Of a stretch of 64,000 nucleotides of DNA, positions 31,624 to 32,436 are shown one piece after another (position 1 is the first letter of the stretch; the number at the start of each line of letters is the position of its first letter). This DNA comes from Octopus bimaculoides (lineage: Eukaryota), in contig NC_068992.1 of assembly GCF_001194135.2 (NCBI RefSeq), forward strand, positions 2,263,202 through 2,327,201, written 5' to 3'. Below the pieces are notes generated by a model. That model was not told where the DNA came from and did not search any database. It saw nothing but the letters and a program-made list of their open reading frames with translations. The position numbers were made by a program, and so were the translations under genes.

Positions 31624-31651
31624 TTTGTATTCTTTATCTTTTCAGGTAAGT
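31624..31651 (+). promoter_or_regulatory. Candidate recursive splice site (ratchet point): juxtaposed 3' and 5' splice sites
   Basis: tttgtattctttatcttttCAG|GTAAGT: a polypyrimidine tract and CAG (31643-31645) followed immediately by a perfect donor (31646-31651). Confidence 0.55.
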
Positions 31652-32436
31652 TCCCGACTTCCATAAATCAGTCTTCTGAATTCGGTTAAGTAGAATATAA
31701 TTTTTTTGCCTGGTTTGTATACTAATGACGTTTGTATATGTTATTTGTGCAACATTCAAATACTATTCAAAACTTACATTAATTCTATTTGAAAAATATG
31801 CTGTGTCTGGTAGCATGATCACTTAAAAAGCATTATATTTTAACCTTCGCCTCCTCATCATAATTTATCACGGTAAAACAAACATGAAATTTATCTTGTT
31901 AGTTGTCGCGAGAAGAAATATCTCAGGTTTAGGGTAATGCTGTTCATCTTCCATAAATGACGGACCAAACAGCATTTACTCTGAATTAACAGCCAACAAC
32001 CTAATGTAAGTGATATTAAACATAAGAAGCGTCAATTTGAGTCGGAAAATTAAAGCAGATCCACTGTGACTATTCAAAGTATTTATTGTTCCACACAGTT
32101 GATATAATGCTAATATTTTGTGTGAGACGGAACGACCAGCACTATGTCGTCTAATTGCTCATCTAATCAATTGTTGAGCCAAGAATACCGAGTTCGTGTC
32201 ATACCAATGACTCTGTTTCTCATTAATTCTTCAAGTTACTGCCGATTATCGGTAATATATCGAGAGGTTCTTTTCTTATATCAAAGTGCGACAAGTGTGT
32301 TCGTGTACGTGTGTAAAATATGTGTTTGTGTCTGTACCTGTGCGCGTTTGTGTATGTGAGCGTTTGTTTGTTTGTTTCTGTGTGTGCACGAGCTCGTGCG
32401 CGCGACATGGGCATAGCATGGTCGAAAGTTTAAACG

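What the first reader, a model, noticed from the sequence alone, without database searches (positions are those of the whole stretch)
31624..31712. Textbook recursive-splicing ratchet point (polyY-CAG|GTAAGT) in an octopus long intron
Seen: a pyrimidine tract (11 of the last 12 nt) plus CAG abuts a perfect GTAAGT donor, in unique non-repeat DNA with no recognisable exon around it. Weaker GT sites lie 39 nt (cg|gttaag) and 67 nt (ctg|gtttgt) downstream. Known: this is the consensus of Drosophila ratchet points and vertebrate RS sites used to remove giant introns stepwise, and these are followed by a short cryptic RS-exon. A rough hand estimate assuming about 34% GC and independent bases gives on the order of 0.001 such sites per window by chance. 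Pyrimidine clustering would raise that figure. I am not aware of recursive splicing being described in cephalopods. Inference: the window lies inside a giant + strand intron that is spliced recursively.
Basis: partly seen in the sequence, partly recalled or inferred. Interest (0 to 1): 0.75.

Follow-up and report, generated by a model that had tools for sequence, protein, structure and literature searches.

The report
Lone consensus acceptor-donor motif, function unproven
The sequence really contains a perfect back-to-back splice acceptor and donor, like the sites flies use to remove giant introns in steps. One such match is about what chance produces tens to hundreds of times in a genome this size, and nothing I could test shows it lies in a transcribed intron or is used.

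Summary
Window 31631-31651 reads tctttatcttttCAG|GTAAGT (AG ends at 31645). It is the only CAGGTAAGT on either strand and the top-scoring of 280 AG|GT sites. It also has T at -5/-6, a TAAT branch-point candidate at -32 and a 90-nt AG-free zone.

It rises to 0.03-0.085 per window under looser definitions. That scales to roughly 30-240 chance sites in a 2.7 Gb genome.

The interpretation (a giant + strand intron, spliced recursively) has no independent support:
- About 10,700 aa of the most protein-like ORF material found no protein match, so no coding exon was found.
- There is no Rfam RNA and no tRNA.
- There is no strand skew once tandem repeats are masked.
- There is no second ratchet-like site.
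- Downstream donors for a cryptic exon are weak.

Conservation, annotation and RNA evidence could not be reached with these tools. My estimates are chance motif in non-coding DNA about 0.65, a used recursive site about 0.15, and the boundary of an unannotated ordinary exon about 0.1. Interest is low until RNA or conservation data exist.

The parts
31624..31642 (+). Pyrimidine-rich tract (TTTGTATTCTTTATCTTTT). The last 12 nt are 11/12 Y, and 16 of the 20 nt at -4 to -23 are Y. T at -5 and -6.
   Evidence: As an acceptor it is in the top 2% of AGs in the window (58 of 3,120 on + score as well), so it is good but not exceptional.
31643..31645 (+). CAG, the acceptor-like trinucleotide; the AG ends at 31645.
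31646..31651 (+). GTAAGT, a perfect consensus donor directly abutting the AG.
   Evidence: It is one of 11 GTAAGT on + and 19 on -, and the only one preceded by CAG and a Y tract. The approximate PWM donor score is 12.8 bits, and the joint score of 16.3 ranks first of 280 AG|GT sites; the next is 10.5.
31611..31615 (+). ATAAT, a candidate branch point (A at 31614 = -32). A second candidate, ATAAC, lies at 31602-31606 (A at 31605 = -41).
   Evidence: Read. The -32 position falls in the -36 to -21 range reported for fly ratchet-point branch points (10.1101/006163). Such motifs are common in AT-rich DNA, so this is weak evidence.
31555..31643 (+). AG-free stretch upstream of the acceptor; the nearest upstream AG is at 31553-31554, 90 nt away.
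   Evidence: 2.8% of AG-to-AG gaps on the + strand are 85 nt or longer (86 of 3,124). This fits an AG-exclusion zone. It fits equally a 91-nt exon-like interval bounded by tgtag| at 31554 and the GTAAGT donor.
31713..31718 (+). GTTTGT, a weak donor 67 nt downstream and the best candidate end of a cryptic RS-exon. GTTAAG at 31685 (+39) does not score above 0.
   Evidence: 3.6 bits against 12.8 for the abutting donor. Other weak donors lie at +164, +227 (acg|GTAAAA, 4.2) and +288 (agg|GTAATG, 5.0). A 67-nt exon would carry stop codons in all three frames (read).

Best explanation
The motif is a real string but most likely a chance juxtaposition of a good acceptor-like tract and a consensus donor hexamer. 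It sits in AT-rich, repeat-laden non-coding DNA, either intergenic or in an intron of unknown strand, and probably has no dedicated function. In a genome of about 2.7 Gb the strict motif is expected tens to a few hundred times without any selection. A reader scanning many windows for striking splice-like strings will meet such sites. Shown: the string, its rank in the window, its chance frequency, and the absence of any detectable gene feature around it. Inferred: that it is not used.
For: - Chance frequency: 0.0004-0.0027 per strand-window from exact Markov expectations, and 0.0016 per strand from observed counts. That is about 30-240 sites per 2.7 Gb. The figure is 0.03-0.085 per window under looser but equally reportable definitions.
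- No gene context: no protein match for the local ORFs or for two composites of 4,981 and 4,966 aa from the most protein-like ORFs of the whole window. There was no exact ORF record in the assemblies index, no Pfam hit on ten candidate ORFs, no Rfam family and no tRNA.
- No transcription-type strand asymmetry: TA skew is 0.2% and GC skew 0.9% after masking tandem repeats, with 8/16 and 7/16 bins positive.
- No second ratchet-like site on either strand.
- Weak downstream donors, at most 5 bits within 300 nt.
- Published octopus annotation places only about 14% of the genome in genes, with an average intron of 5.4 kb (PMC6279123).
Against: - For a single window the strict motif is improbable (about 0.003 on both strands), and it outscores every other AG|GT in the window by about 6 bits.
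- It has T at -5/-6, a feature of 99.5% of fly ratchet points against 44% of ordinary fly acceptors (10.1101/006163). In this T-rich tract that is not independent of the pyrimidine count.
- It has a plausible branch point and a 90-nt AG-free zone.
- The exon search is incomplete. It covered about 10,700 of about 54,000 aa of ORFs of at least 36 aa, missed shorter exons, and I had no positive control showing that octopus proteins are in the database.
- Absence of strand skew has not been calibrated for cephalopods.
Confidence: 0.65

Rival explanations
1. It is a genuine recursive splice site (ratchet point). The window lies in a long + strand intron. The upstream exon is first spliced to the AG at 31645, which regenerates a perfect GTAAGT donor. 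That donor is then spliced onward, so the intron is removed in at least two steps. A short cryptic exon (for example 31646-31712) would aid recognition and then be skipped, because its own donor is far weaker.
For: - The motif matches the fly ratchet-point consensus exactly, including TT at -5/-6. A branch-point A lies at -32, inside the reported -36 to -21 range (10.1101/006163).
- The abutting donor (12.8 bits) is much stronger than any donor in the next 300 nt (5.0 bits or less). That is the direction required by the donor-competition model (PMC8605326).
- A 67-nt cryptic exon would have stops in all frames, as is typical of cryptic RS-exons (PMC8605326).
- The 64-kb window shows no coding exon, which is compatible with a giant intron.
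- The strict motif is improbable per window.
Against: - There is no evidence of transcription, of a host gene or of its strand.
- Chance alone gives about 30-240 such sites per genome.
- Only about 14% of an octopus genome is annotated as genic, and the average intron is 5.4 kb.
- There is no second ratchet-like site, although single sites are the commonest case in flies.
- The best downstream donor at a fly-like distance is very weak (GTTTGT, 3.6 bits), so exon definition is doubtful.
- No paper in the searched library links recursive splicing to octopus, so its use in cephalopods is itself unknown.
Confidence: 0.15
2. It is an ordinary exon boundary of an unannotated, probably non-coding or alternative exon. 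In one version GTAAGT is the donor of a short exon that ends ...CAG at 31645, with an acceptor at tgtag|31555 (91 nt) or cacag|31502 (144 nt). In the other the tract+CAG is the acceptor of an expressed exon that happens to begin GTAAGT.
For: - Acceptor-like AGs lie 91 and 144 nt upstream: cctggcattattgtttgtag| scores -1.1 and atattttattttgatcacag| scores -3.2. The 91-nt interval is open in two frames and the 144-nt interval in one.
- The 90-nt AG-free interval is what one would see between the acceptor and the end of an exon.
- A perfect donor is the commonest reason for GTAAGT to be functional.
Against: - The putative exon is AT-rich and low in complexity, and its last 20 nt are a pyrimidine tract, which is unusual for exon sequence.
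- Its translation matched nothing in the protein database.
- The upstream acceptors are mediocre; roughly the 85th-90th percentile of AGs in the window.
- There is no evidence of transcription.
Confidence: 0.1
3. The motif belongs to a dispersed repeat or transposable-element fragment present once in this window. In that case it would recur many times in the genome for reasons unrelated to splicing.
For: - The window is dense in repeats: 15% tandem repeats and several interspersed families.
- A single-copy test within 64 kb cannot detect genome-wide repeats.
Against: - The 1.4 kb around the site has no similarity to any other part of the window.
- Its ORFs matched no protein.
- There were no exact hits for a 28-mer in metagenome contigs, although that collection is not expected to hold octopus DNA.
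Confidence: 0.05

Closest known systems
Drosophila intronic ratchet points, also called zero-nucleotide exons (Ubx, kuz, osp, fz; 197 sites in Duff et al., more than 500 in later work)
   Same: It has a juxtaposed acceptor and donor with the same consensus, (Y)nCAG|GTAAGT. T is at -5 and -6, and a branch-point A candidate lies near -30. The abutting donor is stronger than any nearby downstream donor. The surroundings are exon-free (10.1101/006163; PMC8605326).
   Different: Fly sites are defined by RNA evidence (junction reads, saw-tooth coverage, lariats), by their position in the sense strand of introns of 11 kb or more, and by ultraconservation of the core. None of these is available here. 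The pyrimidine tract is about 20 nt with three purines, good but not conspicuously longer than an ordinary acceptor. The candidate RS-exon donor is very weak. The genome is about 20 times larger than the fly's, so chance matches are about 20 times more numerous.
Vertebrate recursive splice sites with RS-exons (Sibley et al. 2015; Blazquez et al. 2018, as summarised in PMC8605326)
   Same: It has an AG|GT junction that would regenerate a donor after the first splicing step. The donor-competition logic also fits, since the regenerated donor is stronger than the downstream one. A large, repeat-rich genome with long neural genes is the setting where such sites were found.
   Different: Vertebrate sites depend on exon definition through a recognisable downstream donor, and only nine fully suppressed intronic sites were called with confidence (PMC8605326). 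Here the downstream donors score 5 bits or less, and no host gene is known.
Pseudo or decoy splice sites: consensus-matching sites in non-coding DNA that are not used
   Same: It is a strong match to the consensus with no supporting gene context, at a frequency compatible with base composition.
   Different: Decoys are usually single sites. A perfect donor abutting a good acceptor is rarer, at about 0.003 per window.

Membership tests
Zero-nucleotide ratchet point (Drosophila type) | Acceptor AG directly abutting a donor GT, with a near-consensus (Y)nNCAG|GTAAGT | tested here: met
   The sequence is tctttatcttttCAG|GTAAGT at 31631-31651. It is the top-scoring of 280 AG|GT sites in the window.
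Zero-nucleotide ratchet point (Drosophila type) | TT at positions -5 and -6 of the acceptor (99.5% of fly ratchet points; 10.1101/006163) | tested here: met
   Positions -4 to -7 are TTTT (31639-31642). This is not independent of the pyrimidine count.
Zero-nucleotide ratchet point (Drosophila type) | A pyrimidine tract more prominent than at ordinary acceptors | tested here: inconclusive
   The tract is 16/20 Y at -4 to -23 but only 25/40 at -4 to -43. The acceptor score is in the top 2% of AGs in the window, and 125 other AGs score as well. I had no octopus acceptor set to compare with.
Zero-nucleotide ratchet point (Drosophila type) | Branch point, usually A, 21-36 nt upstream of the AG | tested here: inconclusive
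   An ATAAT motif puts an A at -32 and an ATAAC motif puts one at -41. The motif is present, but such strings are frequent in 36% GC DNA. Use could only be shown by lariat reads.
Zero-nucleotide ratchet point (Drosophila type) | Lies on the sense strand inside a long intron (at least 11 kb, mean 45 kb in flies) | tested here: inconclusive
   No coding exon, RNA gene or strand skew was found in 64 kb. That fits a giant intron and an intergenic region equally. No annotation of the source genome was reachable.
Zero-nucleotide ratchet point (Drosophila type) | Core and immediate flanks conserved between related species far above the neighbouring intron | not testable with these tools
   No cephalopod genome is in any searchable collection. 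ORF-based routes to assemblies of related species returned nothing, and the 28-mer scan of metagenome contigs was empty.
Zero-nucleotide ratchet point (Drosophila type) | RNA evidence: exon-to-ratchet junction reads, saw-tooth read density, recursive lariats | not testable with these tools
RS-exon-mediated recursive splicing (fly cryptic RS-exons; vertebrate RS sites) | A short cryptic exon (about 50 nt in flies) bounded by its own downstream donor, which is weaker than the regenerated donor | tested here: inconclusive
   Every downstream donor is weaker than the abutting one (12.8 bits), as required. They are also very weak in absolute terms: +39 scores 0 or less, +67 GTTTGT 3.6, +227 GTAAAA 4.2 and +288 GTAATG 5.0. 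The PWM is approximate and written from memory.

The most novel reading that the evidence does not exclude
The site is a used recursive splice site in a giant intron of an octopus gene. As far as my searches show, that would be the first ratchet point described in a cephalopod (no paper pairs recursive splicing with octopus; one merely mentions both recursive splicing and cephalopods); the one search that included molluscs and squid was mis-specified and uninformative. It would imply that stepwise removal of very long introns through YnCAG|GTAAGT sites is shared by flies, vertebrates and molluscs.
Probability: 0.15. Interest if true: 0.55.

Novelty: not a real feature. Interest (0 to 1): 0.15.

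Why it matters
If the site were used, it would extend recursive splicing to lophotrochozoans. It would also give a concrete entry point for asking how cephalopods process their very long neural introns. The mechanism is already known in flies and vertebrates and is thought to be unified across metazoans (PMC8605326), so one more site would be an incremental result.

As the evidence stands, the value of this check is methodological. A textbook motif match with a per-window chance of about 0.001-0.003 is still expected tens to hundreds of times in a 2.7 Gb genome. Such matches should not be ranked highly without strand, annotation, conservation or RNA support. The useful question is the genome-wide one: whether the motif is enriched on the sense strand of long introns.

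Tried and rejected
1. Reaching orthologous or same-species contigs through ORFs around the site. Exact look-ups of the 51-aa ORF spanning the site and of a 73-aa ORF 400 bp upstream found nothing. A 749-aa composite of 17 local ORFs found no protein at E<=1e-3. Spurious ORFs from octopus non-coding DNA are evidently not in the collection, so this route to a conservation test failed.

2. Finding a coding exon anywhere in the window to fix the host gene and strand. I ranked stop-to-stop ORFs by amino-acid-composition log-odds and dropped low-complexity and intra-window repeats. Two composites of 4,981 aa (81 ORFs) and 4,966 aa (114 ORFs) then gave no hit. This is negative but incomplete: ORFs under 36 aa and about 80% of ORF residues were not searched, and there was no positive control for octopus proteins in the database.

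3. Pfam on ten ORFs that looked TE-like or protein-like by eye gave nothing above noise. I therefore do not claim those TE identities.

4. Rfam and tRNA scans for an intronic small RNA that would betray a host-gene strand found none.

5. Strand composition skew as a proxy for transcription direction. The raw T>A excess of 1.9% disappeared (0.2%) after masking tandem repeats, so I rejected it as evidence.

6. An exact 28-mer scan of JGI metagenome contigs for host-contaminant DNA returned 0 hits.

7. One literature query was badly specified and returned only general cephalopod papers. I searched again with tighter terms.

8. I considered scanning all six frames against Pfam but rejected it. It would need about 13 calls, and exon-sized fragments rarely reach significance.

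Full report
**The observation.** The + strand at 31631-31651 reads tctttatcttttCAG|GTAAGT. The 12 nt before CAG are 11/12 pyrimidines, the AG ends at 31645, and the donor hexamer occupies 31646-31651. It is the only CAGGTAAGT on either strand of the window. AGGTAAGT occurs once more, on the minus strand at about 395, with no pyrimidine tract. The 1.4 kb around the site has no other copy in the window apart from a 26-nt AAT-rich low-complexity stretch.

**How unusual is it?** For the strict definition (at least 11/12 Y, then CAGGTAAGT) I obtained three estimates:
- Independent bases give about 0.0008 per strand-window (0.22 expected CAGGTAAGT x 0.0035).
- Exact expectations under Markov models of order 1-5, trained on the window, give 0.0004-0.0027. 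Orders 4-5 are inflated by the site itself.
- A semi-empirical estimate gives 0.0016 per strand and 0.003 for both strands. It multiplies the 13 Y-tract+CAG sites actually present by the observed density of GTAAGT, 2.4e-4 per position.

The definition was chosen after seeing the site, however. With an approximate position-weight scoring, 125 AGs in the window have an acceptor as good as this one. That puts 'an acceptor this good plus GTAAGT' at about 0.03 per window. A relaxed definition (at least 10/12 Y, YAG, GTRAGW) is expected 0.085 times. At genome scale (2.7 Gb, the published size of O. bimaculoides) the strict motif is expected about 30-240 times by chance. The match is significant for one window but not for a scan of a genome.

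**Sequence-level anatomy.** The site ranks first of 280 AG|GT dinucleotide pairs on both strands, with a joint score of 16.3 bits against 10.5 for the runner-up. T occupies -5 and -6. That feature is found in 99.5% of fly ratchet points but only 44% of ordinary fly acceptors (10.1101/006163). An ATAAT motif places a candidate branch A at -32, inside the -36 to -21 range reported for fly ratchet points, and an ATAAC motif gives a second candidate at -41. The nearest upstream AG is 90 nt away, and only 2.8% of AG gaps are that long.

Downstream, every donor within 300 nt is far weaker than the abutting GTAAGT (5.0 bits or less against 12.8). That is the direction the donor-competition model requires (PMC8605326). 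But the candidates at fly-like distances are so weak (GTTAAG 0 or less, GTTTGT 3.6) that exon definition is doubtful. No second ratchet-like site exists on either strand. The PWMs I used are approximations written from memory, so those scores are only rankings.

**Gene context, the crux.** I found no evidence for any gene:
- Exact look-ups of two ORFs next to the site in the assemblies index found nothing.
- A protein search with 17 local ORFs (749 aa) found nothing.
- Two composites of the most protein-like, non-repetitive ORFs of the whole window also found nothing in a 5.8-billion-protein database (4,981 aa from 81 ORFs and 4,966 aa from 114 ORFs).
- Ten candidate ORFs gave no Pfam match.
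- There is no Rfam family and no tRNA.
- The raw 1.9% T>A excess on the + strand vanishes (0.2%) once tandem repeats are masked. TA and GC skews are then positive in only 8 and 7 of 16 bins.

An exon-free 64 kb fits a giant intron, but it fits intergenic DNA at least as well. In the O. minor annotation, 30,010 genes of mean 23.6 kb cover about 14% of 5.09 Gb, and the mean intron is 5.4 kb (PMC6279123). My exon search is incomplete in three ways. ORFs under 36 aa were not searched, about 80% of ORF residues were not searched, and there was no positive control that cephalopod proteins are in the database.

**Source of the window.** I could not verify the species by any sequence match. The composition fits the published description of Octopus genomes: 35.9% GC, 15% tandem or simple repeats, and N gaps beside microsatellites, against GC 36.3% and simple repeats 14.7% in the literature.

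**What could not be tested.** Conservation in other Octopus species, annotation of the source genome and all RNA evidence are out of reach. No cephalopod genome or read set is in any collection available here, and a 28-mer scan of metagenome contigs was empty.

**Literature.** No paper in the searched library contains both 'recursive splic*' and 'octopus'. One paper mentions recursive splicing and cephalopods only in passing. The defining features of fly ratchet points and of RS-exons were taken from 10.1101/006163 and PMC8605326.

**Weighing the readings.** Suppose cephalopods used ratchet points as flies do, with perhaps 50-200 sites matching this strictly. A strict match would then be real with a probability of about 0.3-0.8. 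If they resemble vertebrates, where only nine fully suppressed intronic sites were called with confidence, the probability is under 0.1. If they do not use them, it is 0. Averaging over my uncertainty, and allowing for the low prior of a + strand giant intron, I put:
- a used recursive site at about 0.15;
- a chance, unused motif at about 0.65;
- an ordinary boundary of an unannotated exon at about 0.10 (for example a 91-nt or 144-nt exon ending at the GTAAGT donor);
- a copy of a dispersed repeat at about 0.05.

These are judgements, not computed posteriors.

**Verdict.** On present evidence the finding is an isolated consensus match of the kind a large genome produces by chance, and it deserves low priority. 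The worthwhile follow-up is the genome-wide comparison of sense against antisense motif counts in long introns, plus a look at total RNA-seq. Together these would settle both this site and the general question of recursive splicing in cephalopods.

Noticed in passing
window 1-64000: 15% of non-N bases are tandem or simple repeats (149 TRF rows, 9,522 bases masked). GC is 35.9%, and 1,918 N sit in gaps that mostly adjoin microsatellites, which is typical of a short-read draft assembly. The figures match published Octopus genome statistics (simple repeats 14.7%, GC 36.3%), but the species was not confirmed by any sequence match.
   Followed up: partly
window 5419-5828, with partial copies such as 59824-59988 (81%), 36833-37162 and 21528-21909: This is the most repeated interspersed element in the window, with up to 11 overlapping self-hits. 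It is SINE-like in size and recurs on both strands. I did not classify it.
   Followed up: partly
window 8134-8258, 37853-37977, 47798-47922; also 45400-45531 / 63472-63603: Two further short interspersed repeat families, with copies 61-83% identical. Their translations share motifs such as ...FHPFG..., which suggests old copies of one element.
   Followed up: no
window 27-352 and 1069-1380: A pair of ~320-nt segments similar to each other flanks a ~700-bp spacer at the left end of the window; similar peptides on opposite strands suggest they are inverted. This could be the terminal inverted repeats of a DNA transposon or a foldback element.
   Followed up: no
window 20934-21206 (-), 25650-25889 (+), 36301-36549 (+), 61578-61754 (-): By eye these ORF remnants resemble transposable-element proteins: a LINE reverse-transcriptase C-terminal motif ...FHQRCLRQILNV, a Cys-rich tail, a zinc-ribbon transposase N-terminus, and a mariner-type HTH ...IKFCQKLG.... 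None got a Pfam hit, and the two of the four that went into the protein searches (36301-36549 and 61578-61754) got no hit there either; 20934-21206 and 25650-25889 were not searched. The identifications therefore remain unverified.
   Followed up: partly
window 10091 (-) and 9489 (+): These are other AG|GT junctions with strong donors (CAG|GTGAGT at 13.5 bits; TAG|GTAAGG at 10.0 bits) but poor pyrimidine tracts. They are listed only to show what the next-best ratchet-like sites look like.
   Followed up: yes
window 49825-50285 / 51367-51827: The repeat finder reports a 461-nt '96% complementary' inverted repeat here. It is an artefact of two runs of N facing each other, not a real structure.
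   Followed up: yes
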